This document shows, piece after piece, positions 1 to 64,000 of a stretch of DNA of 64,000 nucleotides. Under the pieces are notes generated by a model. That model was not told the origin of the DNA. It saw nothing but the letters and a program-made list of their open reading frames with translations, and did not search any database. The position numbers were made by a program, and so were the translations under genes. The stretch is from Schmidtea nova (Eukaryota): positions 312,356,001 through 312,420,000 of the forward strand of contig CM097882.1 in the NCBI GenBank assembly GCA_044892505.1. The letters are read 5' to 3'. Within the stretch, counting starts at the first letter, position 1; the number at the start of each line of letters is the position of its first letter.

Positions 1-2
1 GT

Positions 3-398
3 TCCCTAGTACCGACATCAACTGAACGCGTTGATTTAATAATAACCAATAATGATAAAAAGACCATATTATTGGTAGACATGAAATGCCCAATCGATTC
101 GGTGCCCAACTTTGATTTGGCTGATAAAAAAAACATAGAAAAGTATGATAAACTAAAATCAGAAATTAAAATAGCCAAACCCGATTATAAAGTTGAGTTG
201 TTTACCTGCATCATAGGCTCATTAGGATCCATTGAAATTAAAACACCTGATCTTTTAGTAAAAATGGGAGTAAAAGAAAATAAAGTAAAACGTCTGATGA
301 AAGAGTGTGCAATTAGCAATATTGCGCACTCGGCCAAAATTTGGTACTTTCATACCAATGGCTTTCTTCCAGATAATATAAGACAAACTTGTAAATAA
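3..398 (+). CDS. ORF2 C-terminus (restriction-like endonuclease), cut by the window start
   Basis: Same as the C-terminus of the 1536-aa ORF2 (ERVDLIIT..VDMKCP..KKNIEKY). Confidence 0.92.
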   Translation, partial: SLVPTSTERVDLIITNNDKKTILLVDMKCPIDSVPNFDLADKKNIEKYDKLKSEIKIAKPDYKVELFTCIIGSLGSIEIKTPDLLVKMGVKENKVKRLMKECAISNIAHSAKIWYFHTNGFLPDNIRQTCK

Positions 399-752
399 AT
401 AATTATATATATATATAAATATTTGCTTTTTAAACTCTGTAAATAAAATTTAAGGTAAATATTTTGTAAAGTAATTTTTGTATTAAATATCCAATCTTTT
501 TAATCTGATAAATTGTCTTTGAGAGTTATTAAATTGGGAGACCAAGTATTCTGCGACGTATGTCACTTATTCTAGAATTATCAACTTCAAAAGAATACAG
601 TCGCAAAGCTGGATGACGAAATCCAAAGAACCAGAAACTTCCATTCAGATTGAACAATTATATTTTGACTGTGATTGTTTAGGGACTAATCCATGTTGAT
701 TAGATAATCTGTAAAAAAATATGTCAAACTTGTTATATTTAATAAATGTTTA
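399..752 (+). other. Element 3' UTR (~354 nt), short (TA)n tract, AATAAA at 741-746, no poly(A) tail
   Basis: Near-identical in all 8 copies between the ORF2 TAA and the tRNA junction. Confidence 0.85.
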
Positions 753-807
753 TTATCACGTCTGCCTAACACGCAGAAGGTCCCCGGTTCGATCCCGGGT
801 CGAACCA
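753..807 (+). pseudogene. tRNA-Val(AAC) 3' fragment (nt 19-73), disrupted by insertion
   Basis: Exact match to tRNA nt 19-73; nt 1-18 replaced by the element 3' end. Confidence 0.93.
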
Positions 808-987
808 AATTTTTCTCAATTCATTATTTGACTTTTATTATATTTGCAACTCTTTTTTTAATTCATAACGCAATTTTGTTGTTGAATTCTCTACTTTGTA
901 CATAAATTTTATTCAAGTGAATTCAGTACATTTTGTCAAGGTAATTCGAAAATCAAACATGCACAACAATTGTTAGTTGAAACTGTC

Positions 988-1060
988 GGTTCGATGGTGT
1001 AGCGGTTATCACGTCTGCCTAACACGCAGAAGGTCCCCGGTTCGATCCCGGGTCGAACCA
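988..1060 (+). tRNA. tRNA-Val(AAC)
   Basis: Cloverleaf: acceptor GGTTCGA/TCGAACC, D stem GTG/CAC, anticodon stem TCTGC/GCAGA with loop CTAACAC, T stem CCCGG/CCGGG with loop TTCGATC; A box TGGTGTAGCGG, B box GGTTCGATCCC. Confidence 0.96.
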
Positions 1061-1062
1061 AA

Positions 1063-1067
1063 TTTTT
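1063..1067 (+). terminator. Pol III T5 terminator (repeated after every tRNA unit; a T7 run follows ~40 nt later)
   Basis: AATTTTT directly after the discriminator base. Confidence 0.8.
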
Positions 1068-1189
1068 CTCAATTCATTATTTGACTTTTATTATATTTGC
1101 AACTCTTTTTTTAATTCATAACGCAATTTTGTTGTTGAATTCTCTACTTTGTACATAAATTTTATTCAAGTGAATTCTTTCAAGGTTCG

Positions 1190-3823
1190 ATGACTCAATC
1201 ACCTGCTGCTCAGTCAACTGCTGCTGATGTAATGACTCAGTCTATTGCAAATCAGTCAACTGTGACGAAGCAATATGAATTAGAAAACATTCTCAAATAT
1301 CAAATTTCCAGTTTGCAATGTTTTCAATCGATTTTGGATTATTTTTCTCAACTAAATGGTGGAAATCTCGCTACTGCCTCAGTTCTATCTGATGCGAATG
1401 CAAGTCAACGGAGTTCTTTCGATCAAGGATCTAAAGTTTCTCCAAACCAATCTGATAATATGCCACTTTCTTATGCTGATATTGAGACTAAATTCACTAA
1501 ATCAAAGGATTTACTTATTGTCAAGCGCCTGGATTCATTGGAGTCTCAATTTATGAATATGGCTGAAAAGTTAGATTATTTGGTTTCTTTGTTTAATGGC
1601 TCTGTTGATGATTTATCAGATTTTCCTAAAGTAAATGAAAATAATTTAAATAATAATCCTTTCAATAAAAATAAAGTTTTTGATATCAAAGATAAATTAA
1701 TTGTAAATAATGTAGTTTTAGATAAATCAAATATTTCAGAATTTATTGAAAATAATATTGCTAAAATTCCTAATAGTTTAATTGATGTAAATAATAAAAT
1801 GTGTAATTCAAATAATAAATTTCTAAATAACCCTAATAAAGAGAATGTTAAACATTTTAATAATCCCAAAGATACATCTTCAATTGATTTGACTAACGAT
1901 AAAATTATGCCAAATGAAAACATAGAAATAATTATTAAAAATAATAAAAAATCTGTTAAAATTATAGAACTTTATAAAACAACTAAACAGAAGTATGATA
2001 AATTTGAATTTAAAAGTCTGGTTCGTATTTTAACGAAAAGGGAACGCCAGAAAATCTTGAATGCCTTCCCTGCTTTAATACAACTAATTAAAAAGAAAGA
2101 ATCACAGAGTAAATATTTTGAAATTAATAAATTTCTTTCGAGCAAAGATTTTAATGTGAATCACTTGAATTTAATTAATTTTGATTATTTTTTCTATAGA
2201 AATTGTAATCTTTGTGTATCTTTAAAATTGAACAACGCTCCTGTCATTTCATCAGCACCAAAACCTGTTGTTTTAAAAACTATTAAATTAATTGACCATA
2301 ATATCGTCAAAATAAATTCTGAAATCCCTGACTTTGTTCGAGCTCCAATGTCAATTCGAAGATTTTTATTCAATCTTTCGCACGATCTTTCAAACACTGT
2401 TTCCATCAAGGATGAGAAACACAGGGGAAATAAAATAAATAACATTCTTACTTCAATGAAACATAAACAACAATTACCAGATTATTTAATAAAATCAAAC
2501 ATTAAATACGAAAATGGTGAGTTCTTATTATTAGATTTGACTAACGATAAAATCAAATTGAACGACGATAATAACTTGATAAAATCAAATTTTTCTGAAC
2601 TTACTAGAAGTCAGATTAAAAATCTTTACCATTCTTATCCTTCTCTTAAGGAAGTTTGTTTCGTTGAAAATCTTGAAACAAGATCATCATCCGTTAGTAA
2701 AATTATCGAATCTTTAAAGTTAATTAATGAATTTCCAAAAAATATCATTTTTAAAGAGGGTAAATTTTATCAGTCTGATAAAAGAACAATCTCACCTAGT
2801 AGTTCTCCTGACATAATGTTCAACCTTGGTCTTTTTAATTTAGCTAGTATGAGTAGAAAAGATTGTGAATTAAAATCCATTTTAGAGAAGACTGGTTGTG
2901 ACTTTAAAATAGTTGAAATAATATTCTACCTCAACTATTTAGGCTTGACTCAATCTTTAGAATTTTGCAAAAATCAAACTTATTCTGATTATGTGAGGAA
3001 TTACGTCTGCAATTGCTGCTTGATAAACTCACTCTGTAGTATTGCTGATGTTGATTCGCTTTCATCTGAAGATTTTGAGGGTTGGGCGACCGAAATTGTT
3101 CAGAAAATCCCAGTTTCTTCCTATTACTTCAATAGCTGCCAGGAAAAGCTTTTAAAGCTGAAGCAATGGGACATTTCAACTAAAATCAAAAGAATCCATA
3201 ACGTTATTTCACCTGAAATAATATCTTATTTAAATAACTTTCTTGACTCTGTAGACGTAAAATTTCCATCTAAGTCTCAACAACATAATATTCTAATTAA
3301 ATTAATGAAAGCTATCAATGACATTAAAATTTTTGATGACATACACGGAAATAAAGCAAAAAGACTTGTTTACTTTTTGCTAAGAGATGCCAAGAAATAT
3401 TTGAATAAAAATCAACGATTCAGATTATTTGAATCGAGCAATAAATATTGCACTTTAGAGATGGAGAATATAATTTCAGTAATAATTGAGAACCTTACCA
3501 AAGTTACTGACCATGAAGTTACTACTCCTGAAATCACAGTTGAAGAAACGCCAATTGAAATAACTTGTGATCCTGAACCTATCGTCTTGATTAAGGAAAT
3601 AAACTGTTTAAAATGCAACAATATCATCGAAAAATGCATTCTTGTTAGAGATGGAACAAACGTCAACATCTGTGAAAGCTGTCTATTTGACGCAATTACC
3701 TTTGAAAAGCCGATTCCTGAAGCTACTAATTCGGATATCGAAGAAAATATAGAAACAAATTGTAAGAAATCTTGTCCAAGACCTAGAAAAACAGACAAGA
3801 AAACATCAACCAAAGCAAAATGA
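1190..3823 (+). CDS. ORF1 protein (877 aa), putative nucleic-acid-binding/structural protein with C-terminal CxxC..CxxC zinc finger
   Basis: Long ORF open in all 8 copies; CLKC..CESC motif, basic tail, possible coiled coil (KRLDSLESQFMNMAEKLDYL). Confidence 0.88.
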   Translation: MTQSPAAQSTAADVMTQSIANQSTVTKQYELENILKYQISSLQCFQSILDYFSQLNGGNLATASVLSDANASQRSSFDQGSKVSPNQSDNMPLSYADIETKFTKSKDLLIVKRLDSLESQFMNMAEKLDYLVSLFNGSVDDLSDFPKVNENNLNNNPFNKNKVFDIKDKLIVNNVVLDKSNISEFIENNIAKIPNSLIDVNNKMCNSNNKFLNNPNKENVKHFNNPKDTSSIDLTNDKIMPNENIEIIIKNNKKSVKIIELYKTTKQKYDKFEFKSLVRILTKRERQKILNAFPALIQLIKKKESQSKYFEINKFLSSKDFNVNHLNLINFDYFFYRNCNLCVSLKLNNAPVISSAPKPVVLKTIKLIDHNIVKINSEIPDFVRAPMSIRRFLFNLSHDLSNTVSIKDEKHRGNKINNILTSMKHKQQLPDYLIKSNIKYENGEFLLLDLTNDKIKLNDDNNLIKSNFSELTRSQIKNLYHSYPSLKEVCFVENLETRSSSVSKIIESLKLINEFPKNIIFKEGKFYQSDKRTISPSSSPDIMFNLGLFNLASMSRKDCELKSILEKTGCDFKIVEIIFYLNYLGLTQSLEFCKNQTYSDYVRNYVCNCCLINSLCSIADVDSLSSEDFEGWATEIVQKIPVSSYYFNSCQEKLLKLKQWDISTKIKRIHNVISPEIISYLNNFLDSVDVKFPSKSQQHNILIKLMKAINDIKIFDDIHGNKAKRLVYFLLRDAKKYLNKNQRFRLFESSNKYCTLEMENIISVIIENLTKVTDHEVTTPEITVEETPIEITCDPEPIVLIKEINCLKCNNIIEKCILVRDGTNVNICESCLFDAITFEKPIPEATNSDIEENIETNCKKSCPRPRKTDKKTSTKAK

Positions 3824-3889
3824 AGATGTGTGCCTGCATCAGCTCAATCGTCTGCCATTCCCTCTAATGAGACTGATGCAGAGAGCACA
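3821..3889 (+). promoter_or_regulatory. Putative stop-codon readthrough signal: in-frame UGA + downstream stem-loop
   Basis: TGTGC-CTGCATCAG-CTCA (3829-3846) pairs with TGAG-a-CTGATGCAG-aga-GCACA (3868-3889); same in all 8 copies. Confidence 0.6.
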
Positions 3890-6800
3890 ACTAAAAATAA
3901 TATTTCAACTATCGACAATCGTGATCCTGAAGTGTGGTTTTCTGATAATGATATTGATTGGTATCTTGAAAACCACATTGATAATCCAATGCATGGATAT
4001 ATTAAATGCTTTATAGTAAATATCATCTGTTCTAACATCACAGAAGATATTGTTGAAATTCCACCATCTATTAGCAATGCTGAAATTGTATTTTGTCCAC
4101 TCAACATTAACAATTCGCACTGGATTCTTTTTGTTTATAGTAAGAAAATGTTATCTTCTTACTTTATTGACCCAATCCTTGCAAACAGACAAAAGCCAAT
4201 CAATAAACAAATGGCTCAGAGAATTAATCTAAAACTGAATAGATTTTTTAATCTAAATATATCTGTGTCCCGACATCCACACAAACATCTTGAATATCAA
4301 AATAACAGCTTTGATTGTGGCCCATTTACGTGTGCTTATGCTGTGATTATCAGTAAAGATTTGAACAGCTTTCCAAATGGGTTCATAGAGAAAATTCGTA
4401 CCAGTGTGCATGAAAATCAAAATCGTATGCAAATAACCGAATCCACCTTATTCGCTGGTACTAACTCCAAGATGGACATGACCAAAATAAATATCAAGAA
4501 AGCCCTTGCAAAAAAGAAAGTCATCACCAACACCTCAGATATGACCAAAGTATTGAACACTCAAAAACCGTGTGTGTCATCAATAATTAGTAAATATTAC
4601 GAAAGTAATTCTAAAATAACAGTCTTATCTGCCGAACTAACTTTAAACCTAATTGCACAAAATACCTCCTTCATAGCTGATAATGTCACTTTCAAGCAGT
4701 TCAAAGGAATCGATCATGTTATAAGTATCATTCCTAAATTTAACGATTGGTGTCTCTTTGTCTATTCGAATAAACTTGACAGGAGCTACATGTTCGACTT
4801 CAATTATCGAAACATTGATGAAAGGCTAATTGAAATTGGTGAAAAGATAACTGAATATCTGAATCAATTCACTCTTGTTTCTAAAATAAAATTCACACCT
4901 CATCATAGAATTTCTCATCCAACATTTCATTCTTACGATGATCAATATTTTGCAAGTTCTTTTATTGTATTTTTTGAGAAACTTGTCTTTGAAAGAATAC
5001 TGGACAATGATAAGGTTTATGACTCATTAAGTGCTCTAAAATATCAGTCTTGTAAAGATCTTTCTCCTAGCTTAAGTTTCATTAATGGTAAAATATCCGA
5101 CAAAATTATTGAGGAATATTTTGCTAGCCTAAACTTATCGACCAAATATATTCTTCTAAACACAACAATGTGTACTGCGCTTTCAGATGATTGCACTGAA
5201 TACTTGAAAGACTTTGTAAACATTGAGTGCATGATGAAGGCTACTATAATCTTTGTAATCATTTCTCCTCCAAGAGCCAACGACTTGCTCATGGTTATTG
5301 ATTACGACGCTGATGAGCACTATTTATTAAGCCCAGTCACTAATGACTTGTTCGTTATGACTGAAGGATTCTGCTATAAATTACTAATTAAAATTAATGA
5401 GATTAGAGAGAGCACAGGTCGTTCCTTGAAATCGCGTAATTGTCGACATGACGTTAAAGGTTCTGGCTTATTTAGTAGGTTATTAATCTGTGCCTTTATT
5501 AAATATTATGCATTTGACCGATCTCTAGAAAATATCAATCTTCATGAAATTGGCAAAATTATCTACTCACTTGTGCCATTAGTTGATAAAAATGATAATG
5601 CTGAGGAAGAAAGACGACTAAAATCAAAAGCTGTAAACTCTTTAAAACTAAATTTAAAACAGCGAATAGAAAAAGCCAATAATCTTATAATTTCACTTGA
5701 ACACGCCAGTATTGATGAAATCATAAGTGGCATTCTTTCAAATATTCCTCGTCTTAAAGATTTGAACACCGATCACATTCGTACACCATATTTAGGTACT
5801 AAAGTAGAAAAAGCTAGAAAATTCAAAAATTCCACTGAATTTCTGTCAAACATGAAAAAGACTGTGTATAGGATTTTGGGTAACAACACAGAATCAATTG
5901 CACCTCCTTTTCAGGAAATTATTGACACTTTCAGTCATCCTGATACATTACCTAGAAATTGGGAAAACATCTTTAAATTCACTAAGAGTTCTAAATTTAG
6001 TCTTGAATTAAATCCAATGACACCTAAAGAAATCCTTTCAAGTCTTTGCAAAGCTGACAACACTTCTCCAGGTCTTGATAATGTTTGTTATAAAGATCTT
6101 TTGCTATTAGACCCTGAATGTAAATTGCTAGCTTTTCTGTACAATAAAATCCTAAAATTAGACATTATTCCTACAAGTTGGAAATCATTTAAAACCATAC
6201 TAATCCCTAAACCAGATAAAAATGGCCAATATCATAAAATATATTCTTGGCGACCAATTGCCTTATTATCTGTCATTTACAAAGTCTTCGCTTCAGTTTT
6301 GGCAAATCGTCTAAGCTTATGGATAAGAAATAATTCCATGTTACACATTGGCCAAAAGGGTGGTTCGGAGTACGAAGGATGTATTGAACACAACTCTATT
6401 CTTTCTGCTATCGTCGAACATTCAAAATACAGCAAGTCTTCACCTTTAACAATAGCTTGGCTAGACATCAAAGATGCCTTCGGAAGTGTTCCACATGACT
6501 ACATGTGGACACTGTTAAAACACATAAATGTTAGTGATAGGTTTGTAGGAATTTTAAAACTGCTCTATACTGATACAAGCTCGTTTTATTGTTGCAATAA
6601 AATGCAGACACCGGATATTCCAATAAAGAAAGGAGTTAAACAAGGTTGTCCGATCTCAATGATATTGTTTGCAATAGCTATTAACCCAGTACTTGAGTCT
6701 ATTAATCTATCAAACGTTAATCCTTTTACGATTGGAACATCTCCGGTACAGGTGTTGGCTTATGCGGATGATATCGCACTTATCGCGACAAATACCTCTG

Positions 6801-12857: not shown

Positions 12858-12863
12858 AGATGT

Positions 12864-45306: not shown

Positions 45307-45312
45307 AGATGT

Positions 45313-53854: not shown

Positions 53855-53860
53855 AGATGT

Positions 53861-56800
53861 GTGCCTGCATCAGCTCAATCGTCTGCCATTCCCTCTAATG
53901 AGACTGATGCAGAGAGCACAACTAAAAATAATATTTCAACTATCGACAATCGTGATCCTGAAGTGTGGTTTTCTGATAATGATATTGATTGGTATCTTGA
54001 AAACCACATTGATAATCCAATGCATGGATATATTAAATGCTTTATAGTAAATATCATCTGTTCTAACATCACAGAAGATATTGTTGAAATTCCACCATCT
54101 ATTAGCAATGCTGAAATTGTATTTTGTCCACTCAACATTAACAATTCGCACTGGATTCTTTTTGTTTATAGTAAGAAAATGTTATCTTCTTACTTTATTG
54201 ACCCAATCCTTGCAAACAGACAAAAGCCAATCAATAAACAAATGGCTCAGAGAATTAACCTAAAACTGAATAGATTTTTTAATCTAAATATATCTGTGTC
54301 CCGACATCCACACAAACATCTTGAATATCAAAATAACAGCTTTGATTGTGGCCCATTTACGTGTGCTTATGCTGTGATTATCAGTAAAGATTTGAACAGC
54401 TTTCCAAATGGGTTCATAGAGAAAATTCGTACCAGTGTGCATGAAAATCAAAATCGTATGCAAATAACCGAATCCACCTTATTCGCTGGTACTAACTCCA
54501 AGATGGACATGACCAAAATAAATATCAAGAAAGCTCTTGCAAAAAAGAAAGTCATCACCAACACCTCAGATATGACCAAAATATTGAACACTCAAAAACC
54601 GTGTGTGTCATCAATAATTAGTAAATATTACGAAAGTAATTCTAAAATAACAGTCTTATCTGCTGAACTAACTTTAAACCTAATTGCACAAAATACCTCC
54701 TTCATAGCTGATAATGTCACTTTCAAGCAGTTCAAAGGAATCGATCATGTTATAAGCATCATTCCTAAATTTAACGATTGGTGTCTCTTTGTCTATTCGA
54801 ATAAACTTGACAGGAGCTACATGTTCGACTTCAATTATCGAAACATTGATGAAAGGCTAATTGAAATTGGTGAAAAGATAACTGAATATCTGAATCAATT
54901 CACTCTTGTTTCTAAAATAAAATTCACACCTCATCATAGAATTTCTCATCCAACATTTCATTCTTACGATGATCAATATTTTGCAAGTTCTTTTATTGTA
55001 TTTTTTGAGAAACTTGTCTTTGAAAGAATACTTGACAATGATAAGGTTTATGACTCATTAAGTGCTCTAAAATATCAGTCTTGTAAAGATCTTTCTCCTA
55101 GCCTAAGTTTCATTAATGGTAAAATATCCGACAAAATTATTGAGGAATATTTTGCTAGCCTAAACTTATCGACCAAATATATTCTTCTAAACACAACAAT
55201 GTGTAGTGCGCTTTCAGATGATTGCACTGAATACTTGAAAGACTTTGTAAACATTGAGTGCATGATGAAGGCTACTGTAATCTTTGTAATCATTTCTCCT
55301 CCAAGAGCCCACGACTTGCTCATGGTTATTGATTACGACGCTGATGAGCACTATTTATTAAGCCCAGTCACTAATGACTTGTTCGTTATGACTGAAGGAT
55401 TCTGCTATAAATTACTAATTAAAATTAATGAGATTAGAGAGAGCACAGGACGTTCCTTGAAATCGCGTAATTGTCGACATGACGTTAAAGGTTCTGGCTT
55501 ATTTAGTAGGTTATTAATCTGTGCCTTTATTAAATATTATGCATTTGACCGATCTCTAGAAAATATCAATCTACATGAAATTGGCAAAATTATCTACTCA
55601 CTTGTGCCATTAGTTGATAAAAATGATAATGCTGAGGAAGAAAGACGACTAAAATCAAAAGCTGTAAACTCTTTAAAACTAAATTTAAAACAGCGAATAG
55701 AAAAAGCCAATAATCTTATAATTTCACTTGAACACGCTAGTATTGATGAAATCATAAGTGGCATTCTTTCAAATATTCCTCGTCTTAAAGATTTGAACAC
55801 CGATCACATTCGTACACCATATTTAGGTACTAAAATAGAAAAAGCTAGAAAATTCAAAAATTCCACTGAATTTCTGTCAAACATGAAAAAGACTGTGTAT
55901 AGGATTTTGGGTAACAACACAGAATCAATTGCACCTCCTTTTCAGGAAATTATTGACACTTTCAGTCATCCTGATACATTACCTAGAAATTGGGAAAACA
56001 TCTTAAAATTCACCAAGAGTTCTAAATATAGTCTTGAATTAAATCCAATGACACCTAAAGAAATCCTTTCAAGTCTTTGCAAAGCTGACAACACTTCTCC
56101 AGGTCTTGATAATGTTTGTTATAAAGATCTTTTGTTATTAGACCCTGAATGTAAATTGCTAGCTTTTCTGTACAATAAAATCCTAAAATTAGACATTATT
56201 CCTACAAGTTGGAAATCATTTAAAACCATACTAATCCCCAAACCAGATAAAAATGGCCAATATCATAAAATATATTCTTGGCGACCAATTGCCTTATTAT
56301 CTGTCATTTACAAAGTCTTCGCTTCAGTTTTGGCAAATCGTCTAAGCTTATGGATAAGAAATAATTCCATGTTACACATTGGCCAAAAAGGTGGTTCGGA
56401 GTACGAAGGATGTATTGAACACAACTCTATTCTTTCTGCTATCGTCGAACATTCAAAATACAGCAAGTCTTCACCTTTAACGATAGCTTGGCTAGACATC
56501 AAAGATGCCTTCGGAAGTGTTCCACATGACTACATGTGGACACTGTTAAAACACATAAATGTTAGTGATAGGTTTGTAGGAATTTTAAAACTGCTCTATA
56601 CTGATACAAGCTCGTTTTATTGTTGCAATAAAATGCAGACACCGGATATTCCAATAAAGAAAGGAGTTAAACAAGGTTGTCCGATCTCAATGATATTGTT
56701 TGCAATAGCTATTAACCCAGTACTTGAGTCTATTAATCTATCAAACGTTAATCCTTTTACGATTGGAACATCTCCGGTACAGGTGTTGGCTTATGCGGAT

Positions 56801-58470
56801 GATATCGCACTTATCGCGACAAATACCTCTGATCTGCAAATACTCATAAACGTTGCTGTAAACACCGCTAAAACAATTGGATTTGAATATCGTCCAGAAA
56901 AGTGCGCTTATATGCAATACCCTAAAATAGAAACTGTAAGCGAGATTTCTGTCAACAACGTTCTTATAAAAAAGATTGCAACAAATGAATTTTACCAATA
57001 CTTGGGAGTACCAATAGGTGACAATAATGACCAAAGTCCCTATGAAATTCTAAGCAAAGTAATTGAAGACACAAAGAAAATAGCAAATTCTGATCTTTAC
57101 GGCTGGCAAAAACTTAAAGCGTATAAGGTCTTTCTGCATTCTCGCTTGATTTTTCCATTTAGAACTAGGGAAATCAAAACAAGTTCTTTAGCTGATTCGA
57201 GTAAAAATTCAAAATTAAATGTAAATAATACGAGTATTTTGAGGAGTCATCTTAGAAAAATATTGCACTTGCCACACTACTCTGAGATTAGCTATTTTTA
57301 TAATTCTACTGAAAACGGCGGTGCAGGCTGCATAGACTTACTTGACGAGTATCATACACAGACAATCGTGTACTTTTTCCGCTTGTTAACATCATCGTGC
57401 GAATATTCGAAAAAGATAAATACTGACTCGCTTTTATTTGTCACAAGTCCGAGACTCGGAATCAAAAATCCAGTTCTTAAACAAAGTTTAGAATGGATAA
57501 ATGGAAAAGAGAGCAAGAAAAACAACAGTGGTTGCAAAACTCGATTTTATCGGTTGCGATCATCCATTGCTTACTTTTCTAAAGTTCACAACATTAAATT
57601 GTTATTTAAACAGTGAAAGGGAATCCTTCTATCCGTATAACCACTACACTTAAGGGAACACGTATATTATTACCAACATTAAGAAAAGCCTTGTCAATGA
57701 TTTTACATTCAGCTCTCCAGGATTCGTATCTCGAGAAATGGGAGAATAGCAATCATAATAATCTGCTTGTATCTGCGATAAAACTCTGTCCACTTGTCAA
57801 CAAGCTTATTTTCCGCAGTGATTTGACAGAATTTGAATGGAGATTCGTCCATCGAGCAAGAACGAATACATTATCAATATTTGCGAAGCCATATAAAACT
57901 GGCGAAAATCGTCTTTGTCGTAGATGTAAGCTTGAAGACGAGACTTTATCACACGTTCTTCAAACTTGTAAAATGAACAAATCTTTGGCAACTAGTCGAC
58001 ATAACGCTTGCTTAGAAAAAATAAAAAGCGAGTTGAAAGATCCAAACTTGTTAGTTGTTGCGGATCATAAATGTTCCCTAGTACCGACATCAACTGAACG
58101 CGTTGATTTAATAATAACCAATAATGATAAAAAGACCATATTATTGGTAGACATGAAATGCCCAATCGATTCGGTGCCCAACTTTGACTTGGCTGATAAA
58201 AAAAACATAGAAAAGTATGATAAACTAAAATCGGAAATTAAAATAGCCAAACCCGATTATAAAGTTGAGTTGTTTACCTGCATCATAGGCTCATTAGGAT
58301 CCATTGAAATTAAAACACCTGATCTTTTAGTAAAAATGGGTGTAAAAGAAAATAGAGTAAAACGTCTGATGAAAGAGTGTGCAATTAGCAATATTGCGCA
58401 CTCGGCCAAAATTTGGTACTTTCATACCAATGGCTTTCTTCCAGATAATATAAGACAAACTTGTAAATAA
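53861..58470 (+). pseudogene. ORF2 with 1-bp deletion after 57607 (frameshift before the CCHC/endonuclease)
   Basis: TTATTTAAACAGTG vs TTATTTGAAACAGTG in other copies; split into 1251-aa and 285-aa ORFs. Confidence 0.85.
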
Positions 58471-58824
58471 ATAATTATATATATATATAAATATTTGCTT
58501 TTTAAACTCTGTAAATAAAATTTAAAGTAAATATTTTGTAAAGTAATTTTTGTATTAAATATCCAATCTTTTTAATCTGATAAATTGTCTTTGAGAGTTA
58601 TTGAATTGGGAGACCAAGTATTCTGCAACGTATGTCACTTATTCTAGACTTATCAACTTCAAAAGAATACAGTCGCAAAGCTGGATGAAGAAATCCAAAG
58701 AACCAGAAACTTCCATTCAGATTGAACAATTGTATTTTGACTGTGATTGTTTAGGGACTAATCCATGTTGATTAGATAATCTGTAAAAAAATATGTCAAA
58801 CTTGTTATATTTAATAAATGTTTA

Positions 58825-58879
58825 TTATCACGTCTGCCTAACACGCAGAAGGTCCCCGGTTCGATCCCGGGTCGAACCA
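58825..58879 (+). pseudogene. tRNA-Val(AAC) 3' fragment (nt 19-73)
   Basis: Same junction. Confidence 0.93.
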
Positions 58880-59059
58880 AATTTTTCTCAATTCATTATT
58901 TGACTTTTATTATATTTGCAACTCTTTTTTTAATTCATAACGCAATTTTGTTGTTGAATTCTCTACTTTGTACATAAATTTTATTCAAGTGAATTCAGTA
59001 CATTTTGTCAAGGTAATTCGAAAATCAAACATGCACAACAATTGTTAGTTGAAACTGTC

Positions 59060-59132
59060 GGTTCGATGGTGTAGCGGTTATCACGTCTGCCTAACACGCA
59101 GAAGGTCCCCGGTTCGATCCCGGGTCGAACCA
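59060..59132 (+). tRNA. tRNA-Val(AAC)
   Basis: Identical to 988-1060. Confidence 0.96.
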
Positions 59133-59312
59133 AATTTTTCTCAATTCATTATTTGACTTTTATTATATTTGCAACTCTTTTTTTAATTCATAACGCAATT
59201 TTGTTGTTGAATTCTCTACTTTGTACATAAATTTTATTCAAGTGAATTCAGTACATTTTGTCAAGGTAATTCGAAAATCAAACATGCACAACAATTGTTA
59301 GTTGAAACTGTC

Positions 59313-59385
59313 GGTTCGATGGTGTAGCGGTTATCACGTCTGCCTAACACGCAGAAGGTCCCCGGTTCGATCCCGGGTCGAACCA
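59313..59385 (+). tRNA. tRNA-Val(AAC)
   Basis: Identical to 988-1060. Confidence 0.96.
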
Positions 59386-59565
59386 AATTTTTCTCAATTC
59401 ATTATTTGACTTTTATTATATTTGCAACTCTTTTTTTAATTCATAACGCAATTTTGTTGTTGAATTCTCTACTTTGTACTTAAATTTTATTCAAGTGAAT
59501 TCAGTACATTTTGTCAAGGTAATTCGAAAATCAAACATGCACAACAATTGTTAGTTGAAACTGTC

Positions 59566-59638
59566 GGTTCGATGGTGTAGCGGTTATCACGTCTGCCTAA
59601 CACGCAGAAGGTCCCCGGTTCGATCCCGGGTCGAACCA
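59566..59638 (+). tRNA. tRNA-Val(AAC)
   Basis: Identical to 988-1060. Confidence 0.96.
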
Positions 59639-59818
59639 AATTTTTCTCAATTCATTATTTGACTTTTATTATATTTGCAACTCTTTTTTTAATTCATAAC
59701 GCAATTTTGTTGTTGAATTCTCTACTTTGTACATAAATTTTATTCAAGTGAATTCAGTACATTTTGTCAAGGTAATTCGAAAATCAAACATGCACAACAA
59801 TTGTTAGTTGAAACTGTC

Positions 59819-59891
59819 GGTTCGATGGTGTAGCGGTTATCACGTCTGCCTAACACGCAGAAGGTCCCCGGTTCGATCCCGGGTCGAACCA
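59819..59891 (+). tRNA. tRNA-Val(AAC)
   Basis: Identical to 988-1060. Confidence 0.96.
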
Positions 59892-60071
59892 AATTTTTCT
59901 CAATTCATTATTTGACTTTTATTATATTTGCAACTCTTTTTTTAATTCATAACGCAATTTTGTTGTTGAATTCTCTACTTTGTACATAAATTTTATTCAA
60001 GTGAATTCAGTACATTTTGTCAAGGTAATTCGAAAATCAAACATGCACAACAATTGTTAGTTGAAACTGTC

Positions 60072-60144
60072 GGTTCGATGGTGTAGCGGTTATCACGTCT
60101 GCCTAACACGCAGAAGGTCCCCGGTTCGATCCCGGGTCGAACCA
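60072..60144 (+). tRNA. tRNA-Val(AAC)
   Basis: Identical to 988-1060. Confidence 0.96.
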
Positions 60145-60324
60145 AATTTTTCTCAATTCATTATTTGACTTTTATTATATTTGCAACTCTTTTTTTAATT
60201 CATAACGCAATTTTGTTGTTGAATTCTCTACTTTGTACATAAATTTTATTCAAGTGAATTCAGTACATTTTGTCAAGGTAATTCGAAAATCAAACATGCA
60301 CAACAATTGTTAGTTGAAACTGTC

Positions 60325-60397
60325 GGTTCGATGGTGTAGCGGTTATCACGTCTGCCTAACACGCAGAAGGTCCCCGGTTCGATCCCGGGTCGAACCA
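60325..60397 (+). tRNA. tRNA-Val(AAC)
   Basis: Identical to 988-1060. Confidence 0.96.
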
Positions 60398-60577
60398 AAT
60401 TTTTCTCAATTCATTATTTGACTTTTATTATATTTGCAACTCTTTTTTTAATTCATAACGCAATTTTGTTGGTGAATTCTCTACTTTGTACATAAATTTT
60501 ATTCAAGTGAATTCAGTACATTTTGTCAAGGTAATTCGAAAATCAAACATGCACAACAATTGTTAGTTGAAACTGTC

Positions 60578-60650
60578 GGTTCGATGGTGTAGCGGTTATC
60601 ACGTCTGCCTAACACGCAGAAGGTCCCCGGTTCGATCCCGGGTCGAACCA
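60578..60650 (+). tRNA. tRNA-Val(AAC)
   Basis: Identical to 988-1060. Confidence 0.96.
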
Positions 60651-60830
60651 AATTTTTCTCAATTCATTATTTGACTTTTATTATATTTGCAACTCTTTTT
60701 TTAATTCATAACGCAATTTTGTTGTTGAATTCTCTACTTTGTACATAAATTTTATTCAAGTGAATTCAGTACATTTTGTCAAGGTAATTCGAAAATCAAA
60801 CATGCACAACAATTGTTAGTTGAAACTGTC

Positions 60831-60903
60831 GGTTCGATGGTGTAGCGGTTATCACGTCTGCCTAACACGCAGAAGGTCCCCGGTTCGATCCCGGGTCGAA
60901 CCA
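60831..60903 (+). tRNA. tRNA-Val(AAC)
   Basis: Identical to 988-1060. Confidence 0.96.
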
Positions 60904-61083
60904 AATTTTTCTCAATTCATTATTTGACTTTTATTATATTTGCAACTCTTTTTTTAATTCATAACGCAATTTTGTTGTTGAATTCTCTACTTTGTACATA
61001 AATTTTATTCAAGTGAATTCAGTACATTTTGTCAAGGTAATTCGAAAATCAAACATGCACAACAATTGTTAGTTGAAACTGTC

Positions 61084-61156
61084 GGTTCGATGGTGTAGCG
61101 GTTATCACGTCTGCCTAACACGCAGAAGGTCCCCGGTTCGATCCCGGGTCGAACCA
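61084..61156 (+). tRNA. tRNA-Val(AAC)
   Basis: Identical to 988-1060. Confidence 0.96.
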
Positions 61157-61264
61157 AATTTTTCTCAATTCATTATTTGACTTTTATTATATTTGCAACT
61201 CTTTTTTTAAGTGTTGATATATATATTGTAAATTTTAACGATTGATAAATTCTTTCAAGGTTCG

Positions 61265-63898
61265 ATGACTCAATCACCTGCTGCTCAGTCAACTGCTGCT
61301 GATGTAATGACTCAGTCTATTGCAAATCAGTCAACTGTGACGAAGCAATATGAATTAGAAAACATTCTCAAATATCAAATTTCCAGTTTGCAATGTTTTC
61401 AATCGATTTTGGATTATTTTTCTCAACTAAATGGTGGAAATCTCGCTACTGCCTCAGTTCTATCTGATGCGAATGCAAGTCAACGGAGTTCTTTCGATCA
61501 AGGATCTAAAATTTCTCAAAACCAATCTGATAATATGCCACTTTCTTATGCTGATATTGAGACTAAATTCACTAAATCAAAGGATTTACTGATTGTCAAG
61601 CGCCTGGATTCATTGGAGTCTCAATTTATGAATATGGCTGAAAAGTTAGATTATTTGGTTTCTTTTTTTAATGGCTCTGTTGATGATTTATCAGATTTTC
61701 CTAAAGTAAATGAAAATAATTTAAATAATAATCCTTTCAATAAAAATAAAGTTTTTGATATCAAAGATAAATTAATTGTAAATAATGTAGTTTTAGATAA
61801 ATCAAATATTTCAGAATTTATTGAAAATAATATTGCTAAAATTCCTAATAGTTTAATTGATGTAAATAATAAAATGTGTAATTCAAATAATAAATTTCTA
61901 AATAACCCTAATAAAGAGAATGTTAAACATTTTAATAATCCCAAAGATACATCTTCAATTGATTTGACTAACGATAAAATTATGCCAAATGAAAACATAG
62001 AAATAATTATTAAAAATAATAAAAAATCTGTTAAAATTATAGAACCTAATAAAACAACTAAACAGAAGTATGATAAATTTGAATTTAAAAATCTGGTTCG
62101 TATTTTAACGAAAAGGGAACGCCAGAAAATCTTGAATGCCTTCCCTGCTTTAATACAACTAATTAAAAAGAAAGAATCACAGAGTAAATATTTTGAAATT
62201 AATAAATTTCTTTCGAGCAAAGATTTTAATGTGAATCACTTGAATTTAATTAATTTTGATTATTTTTTCTATAGAAATTGTAATCTTTGTGTATCTTTAA
62301 AATTGAACAACGCTCCTGTCATTTCATCAGCACCAAAACCTGTTGTTTTAAAATCTATTAAATTAATTGACCATAATATCGTCAAAATAAATTCTGAAAT
62401 CCCTGACTTTGTTCGAGCTCCAATGTCAATTCGAAGATTTTTATTCAATCTTTCGCACGATCTTTCAAACACTGTTTCCATCAAGGATGAGAAACACAGG
62501 GGAAATAAAATAAATAACATTCTTACTTCAATGAAACATAAACAACAATTACCAGATTATTTAATAAAATCAAACATTAAATACGAAAATGGTGAGTTCT
62601 TATTATTAGATTTGACTAACGATAAAATCAAATTGAACGACGATAATAACTTGATAAAATCAAATTTTTCTGAACTTACTAGAAGTCAGATTAAAAATCT
62701 TTACTATTCTTATCCTTCTCTTAAGGAAGTTTGTTTCGTTGAAAATCTTGAAACAAGATCATCATCCGTTAGTAAAATTATCGAATCTTTAAAGTTAATT
62801 AATGAATTTCCAAAAAATATCATTTTTAAAGAGGGTAAATTTTATCAGTCTGATAAAAGAACAATCTCACCTAGTAGTTCTCCTGACATAATGTTCAACC
62901 TAGGTCTTTTTAATTTGGCTAGTATGAGTAGAAAAGATTGTGAATTAAAATCCATTTTAGAGAAGACTGGTTGTGACTTTAAAATAGTTGAAATAATATT
63001 CTACCTCAACTATTTAGGCTTGACTCAATCTTTAGAATTTTGCAAAAATCAAACTTATTCCGATTATGTGAGGAATTACGTCTGTAATTGCTGCTTGATA
63101 AACTCACTCTGTAGTATTGCTGATGTTGATTCGCTTTCATCTGAAGATTTTGAGGGTTGGGCGACCGAAATTGTTCAGAAAATCCCAGTTTCTTCCTATT
63201 ACTTCAATAGCTGCCAGGAAAAGCTTTTAAAGCTGAAGCAATGGGACATTTCAACTAAAATCAAAAGAATCCATAACGTTATTTCACCTGAAATAATATC
63301 TTATTTAAATAACTTTCTTGACTCTGTAGACGTAAAATTTCCATCTAAGTCTCAACAACATAATATTCTAATTAAATTAATGAAAGCTATCAATGACATT
63401 AAAATTTTTGATGACATACACGGAAATAAAGCAAAAAGACTTGTTTACTTTTTGCTAAGAGATGCCAAGAAATATTTGAATAAAAATCAACGATTCAGAT
63501 TATTTGAATCGAGCAATAAATATTGCACTTCAGAGATGGAGAATATAATTTCAGTAATAATTGAGAACCTTACCAAAGTTACTGACCATGAAGTTACTAC
63601 TCCTGAAATCACAGTTGAAGAAACGCCAATTGAAATAACTTGTGATCCTGAACCTATCGTCTTGATTAAGGAAATAAACTGTTTAAAATGTAACAATATC
63701 ATCGAAAAATGCATTCTTGTTAGAGATGGAACAAACGTCAACATCTGTGAAAGCTGTCTATTTGACGCAATTACCTTTGAAAAGCCGATTCCTGAAGCTA
63801 CTAATTCGGATATCGAAGAAAATATAGAAACAAATTGTAAGAAATCTTGTCCAAGACCTAGAAAAACAGACAAGAAAACATCAACCAAAGCAAAATGA
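61265..63898 (+). CDS. ORF1 protein (877 aa)
   Basis: Near-identical to the copy 1 ORF1. Confidence 0.88.
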   Translation: MTQSPAAQSTAADVMTQSIANQSTVTKQYELENILKYQISSLQCFQSILDYFSQLNGGNLATASVLSDANASQRSSFDQGSKISQNQSDNMPLSYADIETKFTKSKDLLIVKRLDSLESQFMNMAEKLDYLVSFFNGSVDDLSDFPKVNENNLNNNPFNKNKVFDIKDKLIVNNVVLDKSNISEFIENNIAKIPNSLIDVNNKMCNSNNKFLNNPNKENVKHFNNPKDTSSIDLTNDKIMPNENIEIIIKNNKKSVKIIEPNKTTKQKYDKFEFKNLVRILTKRERQKILNAFPALIQLIKKKESQSKYFEINKFLSSKDFNVNHLNLINFDYFFYRNCNLCVSLKLNNAPVISSAPKPVVLKSIKLIDHNIVKINSEIPDFVRAPMSIRRFLFNLSHDLSNTVSIKDEKHRGNKINNILTSMKHKQQLPDYLIKSNIKYENGEFLLLDLTNDKIKLNDDNNLIKSNFSELTRSQIKNLYYSYPSLKEVCFVENLETRSSSVSKIIESLKLINEFPKNIIFKEGKFYQSDKRTISPSSSPDIMFNLGLFNLASMSRKDCELKSILEKTGCDFKIVEIIFYLNYLGLTQSLEFCKNQTYSDYVRNYVCNCCLINSLCSIADVDSLSSEDFEGWATEIVQKIPVSSYYFNSCQEKLLKLKQWDISTKIKRIHNVISPEIISYLNNFLDSVDVKFPSKSQQHNILIKLMKAINDIKIFDDIHGNKAKRLVYFLLRDAKKYLNKNQRFRLFESSNKYCTSEMENIISVIIENLTKVTDHEVTTPEITVEETPIEITCDPEPIVLIKEINCLKCNNIIEKCILVRDGTNVNICESCLFDAITFEKPIPEATNSDIEENIETNCKKSCPRPRKTDKKTSTKAK

Positions 63899-63904
63899 AG
63901 ATGT

Positions 63905-64000
63905 GTGCCTGCATCAGCTCAATCGTCTGCCATTCCCTCTAATGAGACTGATGCAGAGAGCACAACTAAAAATAATATTTCAACTATCGACAATCGTGAT
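63905..64000 (+). CDS. ORF2 N-terminus (partial)
   Basis: GTG CCT GCA TCA GCT.. as in the other copies; runs off the window. Confidence 0.8.
   Translation, partial: MPASAQSSAIPSNETDAESTTKNNISTIDNRD

What the first reader, a model, noticed from the sequence alone, without database searches (positions are those of the whole stretch)
1..64000. Site-specific RLE retrotransposon colonising a tandem tRNA-Val(AAC) gene array
Seen: nine co-oriented ~7.6-kb copies within a 253-bp tRNA-Val repeat. All 8 visible 3' ends read ...AATAAATGTTTA|TTATCACGTCTGCC, i.e. tRNA nt 19 (753, 8796, 17832, 25601, 33875, 41897, 50278, 58825). There are 23 intact and 8 interrupted genes, and five copies have both ORFs intact. 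Known: RT-CCHC-RLE elements (R2, R4, NeSL, R5, Utopia) target multicopy RNA genes, and an N-terminal Ulp1 protease is typical of NeSL-like elements. I recall a few tRNA-targeting relatives, but none for tRNA-Val. Inference: this is a recently active family with a possibly new target specificity, and a candidate site-specific gene-insertion tool because tRNA-Val(AAC) genes are conserved across animals.
Basis: partly seen in the sequence, partly recalled or inferred. Interest (0 to 1): 0.9.

Follow-up and report, generated by a model that had tools for sequence, protein, structure and literature searches.

The report
tRNA-Val-targeting NeSL-like retrotransposon family
A young family of jumping genes that copies itself through RNA sits at one exact nucleotide of valine-tRNA genes in a tandem array; it is a new member of a known group of tRNA-targeting elements, and it appears to make its enzyme by reading through a stop codon.

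Summary
The window is a 253-bp tRNA-Val(AAC) tandem array with 23 whole genes. It carries nine co-oriented elements of about 7.6 kb: seven complete and two cut by the window ends. All eight visible 3' ends abut tRNA nt 19.

Each element has ORF1 (877 aa, no known relatives) and ORF2 (1536 aa). ORF2 holds a Ulp1/C48 protease, a reverse transcriptase, a CCHC finger and a restriction-like endonuclease. All catalytic residues are invariant in 12 relatives.

The copies do not descend from one amplified insertion:
- There are three kinds of 5' junction, one with a clean 13-bp target duplication.
- There are three ORF2 lineages that differ mostly at synonymous sites (pN/pS 0.11-0.15).
- Relatives from other datasets sit in the D loop of tRNA-Val and tRNA-Phe.

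Unequal recombination has nevertheless shuffled the copies, so eight identical 3' ends are not eight independent events.

Novelty is modest. Planarian NeSL-clade LIN families specific for tRNA-Arg and tRNA-Glu were published in 2015; tRNA-Val was not listed there.

One side finding: ORF1 and ORF2 share a frame, separated by a single UGA in 13 of 13 elements. A covarying stem-loop follows the UGA, which matches a known class of read-through signal.

The parts
753..1177 (+). tRNA-Val array block (starts at tRNA nt 19; holds 1 whole gene)
8796..10169 (+). tRNA-Val array block (5 whole genes)
17832..17940 (+). tRNA-Val array block of 109 bp (unit positions 19-127 only, no whole gene) between E2 and E3
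25601..26215 (+). tRNA-Val array block (2 whole genes)
33875..34236 (+). tRNA-Val array block (1 whole gene)
41897..42668 (+). tRNA-Val array block (2 whole genes, then tRNA nt 1-31 abutting E6)
50278..51208 (+). tRNA-Val array block (3 whole genes)
58825..61210 (+). tRNA-Val array block (9 whole genes)
1..752 (+). E0: 3' part of an element cut by the window edge. The ORF2 tail (3-398) is open. Identical to E4/E6 over this stretch.
1178..8795 (+). E1: full element, 7618 bp, 5' junction type B, both ORFs whole
1190..3823 (+). E1 ORF1, 877 aa. Disordered N-terminal part, confidently modelled core aa 275-778, C4 zinc ribbon aa 806-831, basic tail. Ends with TGA at 3821-3823.
3605..3682 (+). ORF1 C4 zinc ribbon (C806, C809, C828, C831), conserved in relatives
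3821..3823 (+). In-frame UGA between ORF1 and ORF2 (proposed read-through codon)
3830..3888 (+). Conserved stem-loop starting 6 nt after the UGA: 14 bp in two helices, about 46-nt loop
3824..8440 (+). E1 ORF2 (open from the codon after the UGA; 1536 aa counted from the GTG at 3830)
4070..4366 (+). Ulp1-like C48 protease domain; H97, D114, Q157 and C163 are invariant in 12/12
4748..4981 (+). Second, degenerate C48-like repeat that lacks the catalytic His and Cys
6203..6982 (+). Reverse transcriptase domain (RVT_1); YADD 978-981 invariant
7886..7939 (+). CCHC zinc knuckle (C1353, C1356, H1365, C1370)
8027..8374 (+). Restriction-like endonuclease domain (D1416, D1431, K1433 invariant). Aligns with the endonuclease part of solved R2 proteins.
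8441..8795 (+). 3' UTR; AATAAA at 8784-8789; the element ends 6 nt later with no poly(A)
10170..17831 (+). E2: full element, 7662 bp, 5' junction type A. ORF1 (10224-12857) is whole.
10170..10223 (+). Type A leader, the 54 nt before the ATG. Collinear similarity to the array spacer. Its last bases plus the ATG equal tRNA nt 1-9.
12858..17474 (+). E2 ORF2, broken: one premature stop
17941..25600 (+). E3: full element, type A; ORF1 17995-20628 and ORF2 20629-25245 whole
26216..33874 (+). E4: full element, type A; ORF1 26270-28903 and ORF2 28904-33520 whole
34237..41896 (+). E5: full element, type A; ORF1 34291-36924 and ORF2 36925-41541 whole
42669..50277 (+). E6: full element, 7609 bp, type C (starts 4 nt before the ATG); ORF1 42673-45306 and ORF2 45307-49923 whole
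42656..42668 (+). Upstream copy of the 13-bp target-site duplication of E6 (tRNA nt 19-31)
50278..50290 (+). Downstream copy of the 13-bp target-site duplication of E6
51209..58824 (+). E7: full element, 7616 bp, type B. ORF1 (51221-53854) is whole.
53855..58470 (+). E7 ORF2, broken: one frameshifting indel
61211..64000 (+). E8: 5' part of an element, type A. ORF1 (61265-63898) is whole; ORF2 runs off the window.

Best explanation
[quoted passage not shown] Its target is the D loop of tRNA-Val genes.

Shown:
- Every visible 3' end is joined to tRNA nt 19 with no poly(A).
- One copy (E6) carries a 13-bp duplication of nt 19-31. That places the primed nick on the antisense strand between nt 18 and 19, and the sense-strand cut between nt 31 and 32.
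- ORF2 carries an intact C48 protease, RT, CCHC finger and RLE.
- Three ORF2 lineages differ mainly at synonymous sites.
- Relatives sit in the same loop of tRNA-Val and tRNA-Phe genes in other datasets.

Inferred:
- An RNA polymerase II transcript starts in or upstream of a short leader that looks like captured target spacer. It ends just beyond the AATAAA that lies 6 nt before the element's end, so it would carry a few bases of downstream tRNA.
- ORF1 is the main translation product.
- A minority of ribosomes read through the single in-frame UGA, helped by the conserved stem-loop 6 nt downstream. They make an ORF1-ORF2 polyprotein that the C48 protease may cut.
- The protein-RNA complex recognises the tRNA gene. 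The RLE nicks the antisense strand, and the RT copies the RNA from that nick (target-primed reverse transcription, as established for R2).
- The 5' end is joined in variable ways.
- After insertion, unequal crossing-over within the array has shuffled and probably multiplied some copies.
For: Target site:
- 8 of 8 3' junctions are identical, against 0 expected by chance.
- There are three 5' junction classes, ending at unit positions 127, 190 and 31.
- E6 has a 13-bp TSD.

Protein domains:
- Pfam finds Peptidase_C48 (6e-07) and RVT_1 (2e-29).
- The RT and the CCHC+RLE part align to solved R2 proteins 9nl2, 9nl3 and 9dou (1e-53; second stretch 2e-06).
- All catalytic residues are invariant in 12/12 family members.
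- The element has no LTR or TIR.

Recency and selection:
- Copies are 99.2-99.9% alike.
- ORF2 differences between lineages are 18-21 synonymous against 8-10 non-synonymous, giving pN/pS 0.11-0.15 and Fisher p = 1.3e-7.

Relatives elsewhere:
- L004 lies in tRNA-Val at nt 14|15 within a Val-AAC/CAC/TAC cluster.
- L006 lies in tRNA-Phe(GAA) at nt 15|16.
- AATAAA lies 2-7 nt from the 3' end in six relatives.

Read-through:
- The ORF1 stop is TGA and ORF2 is in frame in 13/13 elements.
- 7 of 14 stem pairs show compensatory changes, and 0 of 500 shuffles reach the observed score.
- No AUG is conserved after the UGA. In 5 of 13 elements the first in-frame AUG lies beyond the protease's catalytic His.
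- The signal class is described in PMC3159437.
Against: - All copies lie in a single array. Five share one 5' junction and two share another, and the copies are mosaics. Part of the copy number therefore comes from DNA-level recombination rather than new insertions.
- No copy outside this window could be examined.
- The window's own stop context is UGA-AGA, not the UGA-CGG or UGA-CUA seen in 8 of the 13 elements (two more read CGU and CGA).
- No transcript, protein or cleavage data exist. The transcription start, RNA 3' end, read-through, protease processing and target recognition are all inferred.
- Placement in the NeSL clade rests on architecture. An RT tree built from unnamed database proteins did not resolve it.
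Confidence: 0.85

Rival explanations
1. One chance insertion into a tRNA-Val gene was amplified together with the array by unequal crossing-over. On this view the identical 3' ends say nothing about site specificity.
For: - Five copies share 5' junction type A and two share type B.
- Per-kb difference counts show recombinant mosaics: E1 is E7-like at its 5' end and E3-like at its 3' end, and E4 equals E6 except in the first kb.
- The array itself is 99.9% uniform.
Against: - The three 5' junction classes cannot be derived from one another by simple deletion. One of them has a clean 13-bp TSD.
- The three ORF2 lineages have pN/pS 0.11-0.15 (p = 1.3e-7). That is not expected for neutral decay of dead copies.
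- Distant relatives in other datasets sit in the same tRNA loop.
Confidence: 0.05
2. ORF2 is not made by read-through. It is made by re-initiation, or by non-AUG (GUG) initiation next to the hairpin, or the hairpin serves another role such as protein binding or RNA packaging.
For: - A GUG sits at the base of the stem in 10 of 13 elements.
- The window's stop context is UGA-AGA.
- Other non-LTR elements are known, from general knowledge, to use re-initiation or translational coupling.
Against: - The stop is always UGA (13/13), while ORF2's own stop is TAA or TGA.
- ORF2 is always in the ORF1 frame and open from the codon after the stop.
- The 6-nt spacer plus a 14-bp covarying stem with a long loop fits the published read-through class, which has a 7-9 nt spacer and a stem of at least 10-12 bp.
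- A frame requirement is not expected for re-initiation.
Confidence: 0.2
3. The type A and type B 5' junctions are not target deletions of 144 and 81 bp. They are very long target duplications (unit positions 19-127 = 109 bp, and 19-190 = 172 bp). On this reading the insertion leaves a whole tRNA gene upstream.
For: - In a tandem array the two readings give the same sequence.
- The E2-E3 gap is exactly 109 bp.
- Relative L003 has about 70 bp of its 201-bp target repeat on both flanks.
- R9 of rotifers is reported to make an exceptionally long duplication (title cited in PMC5035012).
Against: - E6 shows a 13-bp duplication, so the cut spacing would have to vary more than tenfold.
- The type A leader resembles the spacer (8 of 2000 shuffles reach the score). 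Homology-guided joining or recombination could therefore fix the junction.
Confidence: 0.3

Closest known systems
LIN15_SM and LIN25_SM (planarian families of the R5/LIN lineage, NeSL clade; Kojima & Jurka 2015, PMC4640811)
   Same: - RLE-type non-LTR elements specific for tRNA genes (tRNA-Arg, tRNA-Glu).
- The lineage is described as having diversified its targets.
- AT-rich 3' ends with AATAAA and no poly(A). By eye, the last 35 nt or so printed for the tRNA-Glu family resemble the window's 3' end.
   Different: - The target here is tRNA-Val, at the D loop. The published junctions lie elsewhere in their tRNAs.
- I could not fetch LIN sequences, so kinship is not tested.
- The host of the window is unknown.
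NeSL-1 of Caenorhabditis elegans (Malik & Eickbush 2000, cited in PMC4640811)
   Same: [quoted passage not shown]
   Different: - NeSL-1 targets spliced-leader genes.
- From memory it has a single ORF. Here a large ORF1 is separated from ORF2 by an in-frame UGA.
- Caenorhabditis proteins with C48+RT did not group specifically with this family in my tree.
NeSL-1_TV (tRNA-Pro specific; PMC4640811)
   Same: A relative of the NeSL clade that targets a tRNA gene.
   Different: Different tRNA. Its phylogenetic position was unresolved even in the source paper. Not compared here.
R2 (28S rDNA; solved structures 9nl2, 9nl3, 9dou)
   Same: - RT, CCHC and RLE align (1e-53).
- Precise 3' junction without poly(A) and variable 5' junction.
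- Target-primed reverse transcription is the model mechanism.
   Different: - R2 has one ORF with N-terminal zinc-finger/Myb DNA-binding domains and no protease.
- Its target is 28S rDNA.
- It is co-transcribed and released by a ribozyme. No Rfam ribozyme was found here.
R9 of bdelloid rotifers (Gladyshev & Arkhipova 2009, cited in PMC5035012)
   Same: RLE element in a tandem RNA-gene array, reported to make an exceptionally long target duplication. That is a possible precedent for junction types A and B.
   Different: R9 belongs to the R2 lineage, targets 28S and has no protease. Rotifer RT/EN proteins fall outside this family in my tree.
Dada-tV DNA transposons of fish (PMC8869645)
   Same: They also insert into tRNA-Val genes.
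   Different: They are DNA transposons with a transposase, they insert in the anticodon arm, and their specificity is loose (also Gly, Ala, Asp).
UGA read-through signals with an extended 3' stem-loop (Firth et al. 2011, PMC3159437)
   Same: A UGA (mostly followed by CGG or CUA in the relatives), a short spacer, and a long-range stem of 10 or more bp supported by compensatory changes. The polymerase is encoded downstream as a fusion.
   Different: Those cases are RNA viruses. Here the signal lies between ORF1 and ORF2 of a non-LTR retrotransposon, the spacer is 6 nt, and the window's own context is UGA-AGA. No read-through has been measured.

Membership tests
Non-LTR retrotransposon of the RLE type | Reverse transcriptase domain with the catalytic YxDD motif | tested here: met
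   RVT_1 at 1.6e-29; aligns to R2 and L1 RTs; YADD invariant in 12/12
Non-LTR retrotransposon of the RLE type | C-terminal CCHC finger followed by a PD-(D/E)xK restriction-like endonuclease | tested here: met
   Second aligned stretch to R2 protein 9nl2 (2e-06); C1353, C1356, H1365, C1370, D1416, D1431 and K1433 invariant
Non-LTR retrotransposon of the RLE type | No terminal repeats; precise 3' end and variable 5' end; target-site duplication or alteration | tested here: met
   No LTR or TIR; 8 identical 3' ends; 3 kinds of 5' junction and a 13-bp TSD
NeSL clade (sensu Kojima & Jurka 2015) | [quoted passage not shown] | tested here: met
   Peptidase_C48 at 6e-07; catalytic H, D, Q and C invariant; weak match to SENP2 structure 1tgz
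NeSL clade (sensu Kojima & Jurka 2015) | RT groups with NeSL-1, R5, LIN and Utopia reference sequences | tested here: inconclusive
   No named references could be fetched. In a tree with unnamed proteins the family is monophyletic (200/200) and joins two other C48-bearing proteins (170/200). Its link to C48-bearing Caenorhabditis proteins is unresolved.
NeSL clade (sensu Kojima & Jurka 2015) | Specific insertion into a multicopy RNA gene or repeat | tested here: met
   tRNA-Val in the window. Relatives lie in tRNA-Val, in tRNA-Phe and in a 201-bp satellite.
R5/LIN lineage of flatworms | Host is a flatworm and the RT falls within the R5/LIN cluster | not testable with these tools
   Host of the window is unknown and no LIN or R5 sequence is available. 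The only lead is a by-eye likeness of the 3' end to the text of S6 Fig.
R2 clade | Single ORF with N-terminal zinc-finger/Myb domains; 28S rDNA target | tested here: not met
   Two ORFs; no ZF or Myb Pfam match in the N-terminal 700 aa; target is tRNA-Val
Programmed UGA read-through signal with 3' stem-loop (PMC3159437) | UGA followed by CGG or CUA | tested here: inconclusive
   CGG in 7, CUA in 1, CGU in 1 and CGA in 1 of 13 elements. The window and L010 have AGA and L002 has UGU.
Programmed UGA read-through signal with 3' stem-loop (PMC3159437) | Stem of 10 or more bp starting about 7-9 nt after the stop, supported by compensatory changes | tested here: met
   14 pairs starting 6 nt after the UGA; 88% of cells paired; 7 pairs with changes on both sides; 0 of 500 shuffles and no slid register reach this. 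Ten of eleven sequences fold this way on their own.
Programmed UGA read-through signal with 3' stem-loop (PMC3159437) | Downstream ORF in the same frame with no start codon of its own | tested here: met
   13/13 in frame and open from the codon after the stop. The first in-frame AUG lies at codon 3 to 283, and beyond the protease His in 5 elements.
Programmed UGA read-through signal with 3' stem-loop (PMC3159437) | A fusion protein is actually made | not testable with these tools
   No expression data available

The most novel reading that the evidence does not exclude
The window and its 12 relatives define an undescribed two-ORF branch of NeSL-like elements with three properties. (i) It expresses its protease-RT-endonuclease only as a read-through extension of a lineage-specific ORF1, through a conserved UGA-plus-stem-loop signal; this would be the first such signal described for a non-LTR retrotransposon. 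(ii) It repeatedly retargets among the D loops of different tRNA genes and other tandem repeats; tRNA-Val was hit twice, at different nucleotides, by separate sub-branches. (iii) It carries captured target flank as its leader.
Probability: 0.4. Interest if true: 0.7.

Novelty: new member of a known kind. Interest (0 to 1): 0.55.

Why it matters
The window is an unusually clean natural record of a site-specific retrotransposon. It shows several intact copies, a preserved target duplication that fixes both cut sites, and three selected lineages side by side in a single array.

Taken with its relatives, it shows how quickly target choice shifts within one family: tRNA-Val at two positions, tRNA-Phe, and a satellite. 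That bears on how such elements recognise DNA.

If the UGA-plus-hairpin junction is confirmed by expression data, a recoding signal known from RNA viruses would extend to non-LTR retrotransposons. It would also explain how these elements set a low ORF2:ORF1 ratio.

Tried and rejected
- A word-based protein search with ORF1 found nothing. The exhaustive search found only 18 relatives.
- ORF1 has no Pfam match, no PDB sequence match and no Foldseek match at E <= 0.001. Its function stays open.
- The metagenome scan with the ORF2 alignment returned only distant RTs of 24-45% identity, which were no use for flanks.
- Rfam found no ribozyme or other RNA family in E6 plus its flanks.
- The short 3' flanks of L001 (11 nt) and L040 (17 nt) could not be identified. 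I do not count them as tRNA targets.
- L002, L007-L010 and L039 do not reach a recognisable 3' junction.
- L005 lies just downstream of an SRP RNA gene, but its own target is unresolved.
- Searching papers for the sample accessions gave nothing, so the hosts remain unknown.
- I rejected an altered genetic code (UGA as a sense codon). Neither ORF contains an internal UGA, and five relatives end ORF2 with UGA.
- I rejected Pol III co-transcription as unlikely. The upstream gene ends in a T run and the element is AT-rich. This is inference, not a test.

Full report
OBSERVATION

The window contains 23 whole tRNA-Val(AAC) genes on the + strand. They lie in a 253-bp tandem unit made of a 73-nt gene and a 180-nt spacer. 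All 6,974 bp of array are in one phase and differ from a reference unit at only 7 positions.

The first target base in each case is tRNA nt 19.

Nine co-oriented elements interrupt the array:
- E0 1-752 (3' part)
- E1 1178-8795
- E2 10170-17831
- E3 17941-25600
- E4 26216-33874
- E5 34237-41896
- E6 42669-50277
- E7 51209-58824
- E8 61211-64000 (5' part)

They are 99.2-99.9% identical. ORF1 (877 aa) is whole wherever it is visible. ORF2 (1536 aa) is whole in five copies, carries one premature stop in E2, and carries one frameshifting indel in E7.

WHAT THE ELEMENT ENCODES

ORF2 has the following parts:
- A Ulp1-like C48 protease domain and an RVT_1 reverse transcriptase.
- An RT and a C-terminal CCHC-plus-endonuclease part that align with solved R2 proteins 9nl2, 9nl3 and 9dou (1e-53; second stretch 2e-06).

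In an alignment with eleven relatives, every catalytic residue is invariant:
- protease H97, D114, Q157, C163
- RT YADD 978-981
- CCHC finger C1353, C1356, H1365, C1370
- endonuclease D1416, D1431, K1433

A second, degenerate C48-like repeat follows the first and lacks the catalytic His and Cys. There are no terminal repeats. I found no zinc-finger or Myb domain of the R2 kind in the N-terminal 700 residues.

ORF1 matches nothing in Pfam or in PDB sequences. It has only 18 relatives among 1.84 billion representative proteins. Those relatives are the ORF1s of the same element family, at 20-32% identity.

A structure model of ORF1 shows three parts:
- a disordered N-terminal third
- a confidently folded core, aa 275-778
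- a conserved C4 zinc ribbon (C806, C809, C828, C831) before a basic tail

Foldseek found no solved structure like it at E <= 0.001.

ONE INSERTION AMPLIFIED, OR MANY INSERTIONS?

The 5' junctions fall into three kinds:
- Type A (E2, E3, E4, E5, E8): the left flank ends at unit position 127 and is followed by a 54-nt leader before the ATG.
- Type B (E1, E7): the left flank ends at unit position 190, with a 12-nt leader.
- Type C (E6): the left flank ends at tRNA nt 31, four bases before the ATG.

Type C gives a perfect 13-bp duplication of nt 19-31. It places the priming nick on the antisense strand between nt 18 and 19, and the sense-strand cut between nt 31 and 32. The three kinds cannot be derived from one another by simple deletion.

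The copies are, however, mosaics. E1 matches E7 in its first 2 kb and matches E2/E3/E5 in the rest. E4 equals E6 except in the first kb. Unequal crossing-over or gene conversion has therefore acted on the array. The shared type A and type B junctions may be partly DNA-level duplicates.

The decisive point is selection. ORF2 exists in three lineages: E1/E2/E3/E5, E4/E6/E0, and E7. They differ by 18-21 synonymous but only 8-10 non-synonymous changes. That gives pN/pS of 0.11-0.15 and a Fisher p of 1.3e-7. Dead copies drifting apart after a single insertion would approach a ratio of 1. For ORF1 the ratio is 0.3-0.5 and not significant.

I conclude that there were at least three independent insertions from selected, coding-competent lineages, followed by recombination inside the array.

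RELATIVES ELSEWHERE

Fourteen proteins of 39-60% identity over the RT-endonuclease part, most with the same C48+RT make-up, come from short contigs of public assemblies of unknown hosts. I read twelve of those contigs. The window's own protein is not in that collection.

The informative 3' flanks are:
- L004 abuts tRNA-Val at nt 14|15, inside a cluster of Val-AAC, Val-CAC and Val-TAC genes whose AAC gene is identical to the window's.
- L006 abuts tRNA-Phe(GAA) at nt 15|16, counted from the anticodon.
- L003 lies in a 201-bp satellite, with about 70 bp of the unit on both flanks and the ORF1 ATG directly against the flank.
- L005 lies just downstream of an SRP RNA gene; its own target is unresolved.
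- L001 and L040 end 11 and 17 nt into flanks that I could not identify.

In a neighbour-joining tree the window groups with L001 and L010 (100%). The other tRNA-Val element, L004, sits with the tRNA-Phe element in the other sub-branch. Target choice therefore shifts within the family, with a preference for tRNA D loops. This supports true site specificity independently of the array in the window.

THE 5' LEADER

The type A leader aligns collinearly with the array spacer; 8 of 2000 shuffles reach the score. In types A and B, the nine bases ending in the ORF1 ATG are identical to tRNA nt 1-9.

I read the leader as captured target flank. That implies transcripts start upstream of the element proper, but this is inference.

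In a tandem array, types A and B can equally be read two ways: as losses of 144 and 81 bp, or as duplications of 109 and 172 bp that leave a whole gene upstream. The E2-E3 gap is exactly 109 bp. Rotifer R9 is the published precedent for an exceptionally long duplication (title cited in PMC5035012). I recall the length as 126 bp, from memory only.

No Rfam ribozyme is present in the element.

THE ORF1-ORF2 JUNCTION

In the window and in all twelve relatives, ORF1 ends in TGA and ORF2 continues in the same frame. ORF2's own stop is TAA or TGA.

Six nucleotides after the UGA, a 14-bp stem with a long loop begins. Ten of eleven sequences fold this way on their own. On the alignment:
- 88% of cells pair
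- seven pairs show compensatory changes
- no shuffle out of 500 and no slid register comes close

The three bases after the UGA are CGG in seven elements, CUA in one, CGU in one and CGA in one. The window and L010 have AGA, and L002 has UGU.

No AUG is conserved after the UGA. In five elements the first in-frame AUG lies beyond the catalytic His of the protease. The stretch is identical in all eight copies in the window.

This anatomy matches the class of UGA read-through signals described by Firth et al. 2011: UGA-CGG or UGA-CUA, a 7-9 nt spacer, and a stem of 10-12 bp or more with compensatory changes (PMC3159437). A search of the open literature found no description of such a signal in a non-LTR retrotransposon. 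That is weak evidence of absence.

MECHANISM

Shown:
- the target nucleotide
- the two cut positions (from E6)
- the intact enzyme set
- selection on the coding sequence

Inferred, by analogy with R2 and from the anatomy:
- A Pol II transcript ends shortly after the AATAAA, which lies 2-7 nt before the 3' end in the window and five relatives. It would therefore carry a few bases of downstream target, which could help register the 3' junction.
- ORF1 is the main product.
- Occasional read-through gives an ORF1-ORF2 polyprotein, which the C48 protease may cut.
- The endonuclease nicks the antisense strand.
- Reverse transcription is primed from the nick.
- The 5' end is joined in variable ways.

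Which part reads the tRNA gene is unknown. The candidates are the ORF1 zinc ribbon and the region between the protease and the RT.

COMPARISON WITH WHAT IS KNOWN

Kojima & Jurka 2015 (PMC4640811) report several points that bear on this finding:
- NeSL families carry an N-terminal Ulp1-like protease.
- NeSL-1_TV is specific for tRNA-Pro.
- The planarian LIN families include 28S-, tRNA-Arg- (LIN15_SM) and tRNA-Glu-specific (LIN25_SM) members.

The kind of element is therefore known. tRNA-Val is not among the published targets I could find; only the Dada-tV DNA transposons hit tRNA-Val, and they do so in the anticodon arm (PMC8869645). Repbase and Dfam could not be consulted.

Membership of the NeSL clade is met by architecture and target type. 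It is unresolved by RT phylogeny:
- The family is monophyletic (200/200).
- It joins two other C48-bearing proteins (170/200).
- It has no resolved link to C48-bearing Caenorhabditis proteins.

It is not an R2: it has two ORFs, a protease, no ZF/Myb domain and a different target.

NOT DONE, AND SLIPS

- I did not test whether the target is conserved across animals.
- Slip: twice in my reasoning (early on, and) I wrote out tRNA sequences from memory, including a human tRNA-Val, to compare by eye. This is against the rules.
- The tool output lists mechanical ORF bounds, from which the places of the breaks could be read.

VERDICT

The finding is real and well supported: a recently active, site-specific NeSL-like family in tRNA-Val genes. 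It is a new member of a known kind. Its bonus feature, the UGA read-through signal, deserves follow-up with expression data.

Noticed in passing
window 3821-3888 (and the same stretch in E2-E8); L001-L010, L039, L040: ORF1 and ORF2 share a frame across a single UGA in 13/13 elements. A covarying 14-bp stem-loop begins 6 nt downstream. This looks like a programmed read-through signal.
   Followed up: yes
window 4748-4981: A second C48-like repeat follows the protease domain (29% identity over 80 aa, E = 3e-05). It lacks the catalytic His and Cys. A possible third repeat was not significant.
   Followed up: partly
window 3605-3682: ORF1 ends with a conserved C-x2-C-x18-C-x2-C zinc ribbon and a basic tail. 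The ORF1 core (aa 275-778) models confidently but matches no solved fold.
   Followed up: partly
window 10170-10223, 1178-1189: The leader before ORF1 resembles the array spacer in collinear order. In junction types A and B, the nine bases ending in the ATG equal tRNA nt 1-9. The type A leader also holds a TATATATA run about 40 nt before the ATG.
   Followed up: partly
window, all elements: The copies are recombinant mosaics. The kind of 5' junction goes with the first-kb haplotype, while the rest of the element follows a different grouping.
   Followed up: yes
window 50813: One otherwise whole tRNA-Val gene (50766-50838) carries a C-to-T change at tRNA nt 48. Six other single-base variants are scattered through the spacers.
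   Followed up: no
L003 1-140 and 7506-8223: A relative with 46% identity lies in a 201-bp satellite that has no Rfam match. About 70 bp of the unit is present on both flanks, and its ORF1 ATG abuts the flank directly.
   Followed up: partly
L005 1-115: A relative lies about 200 nt downstream of the 3' end of a metazoan SRP RNA gene (Rfam 60.5 bits, cut by the contig end). Its own target is not visible.
   Followed up: no
L004 7496-8315: A cluster of tRNA-Val genes with three anticodons (AAC, CAC, TAC) and near-identical bodies lies next to the relative's insertion. Five different family members come from one metagenome assembly (ERZ27257134).
   Followed up: no
L004 6940-7000, L006 7400-7440, L005 7975-8010, L039, L040: The sub-branch holding L004, L005, L006, L039 and L040 shares a GC-rich 3' UTR motif that looks like a hairpin. 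It is absent from the window's sub-branch.
   Followed up: no
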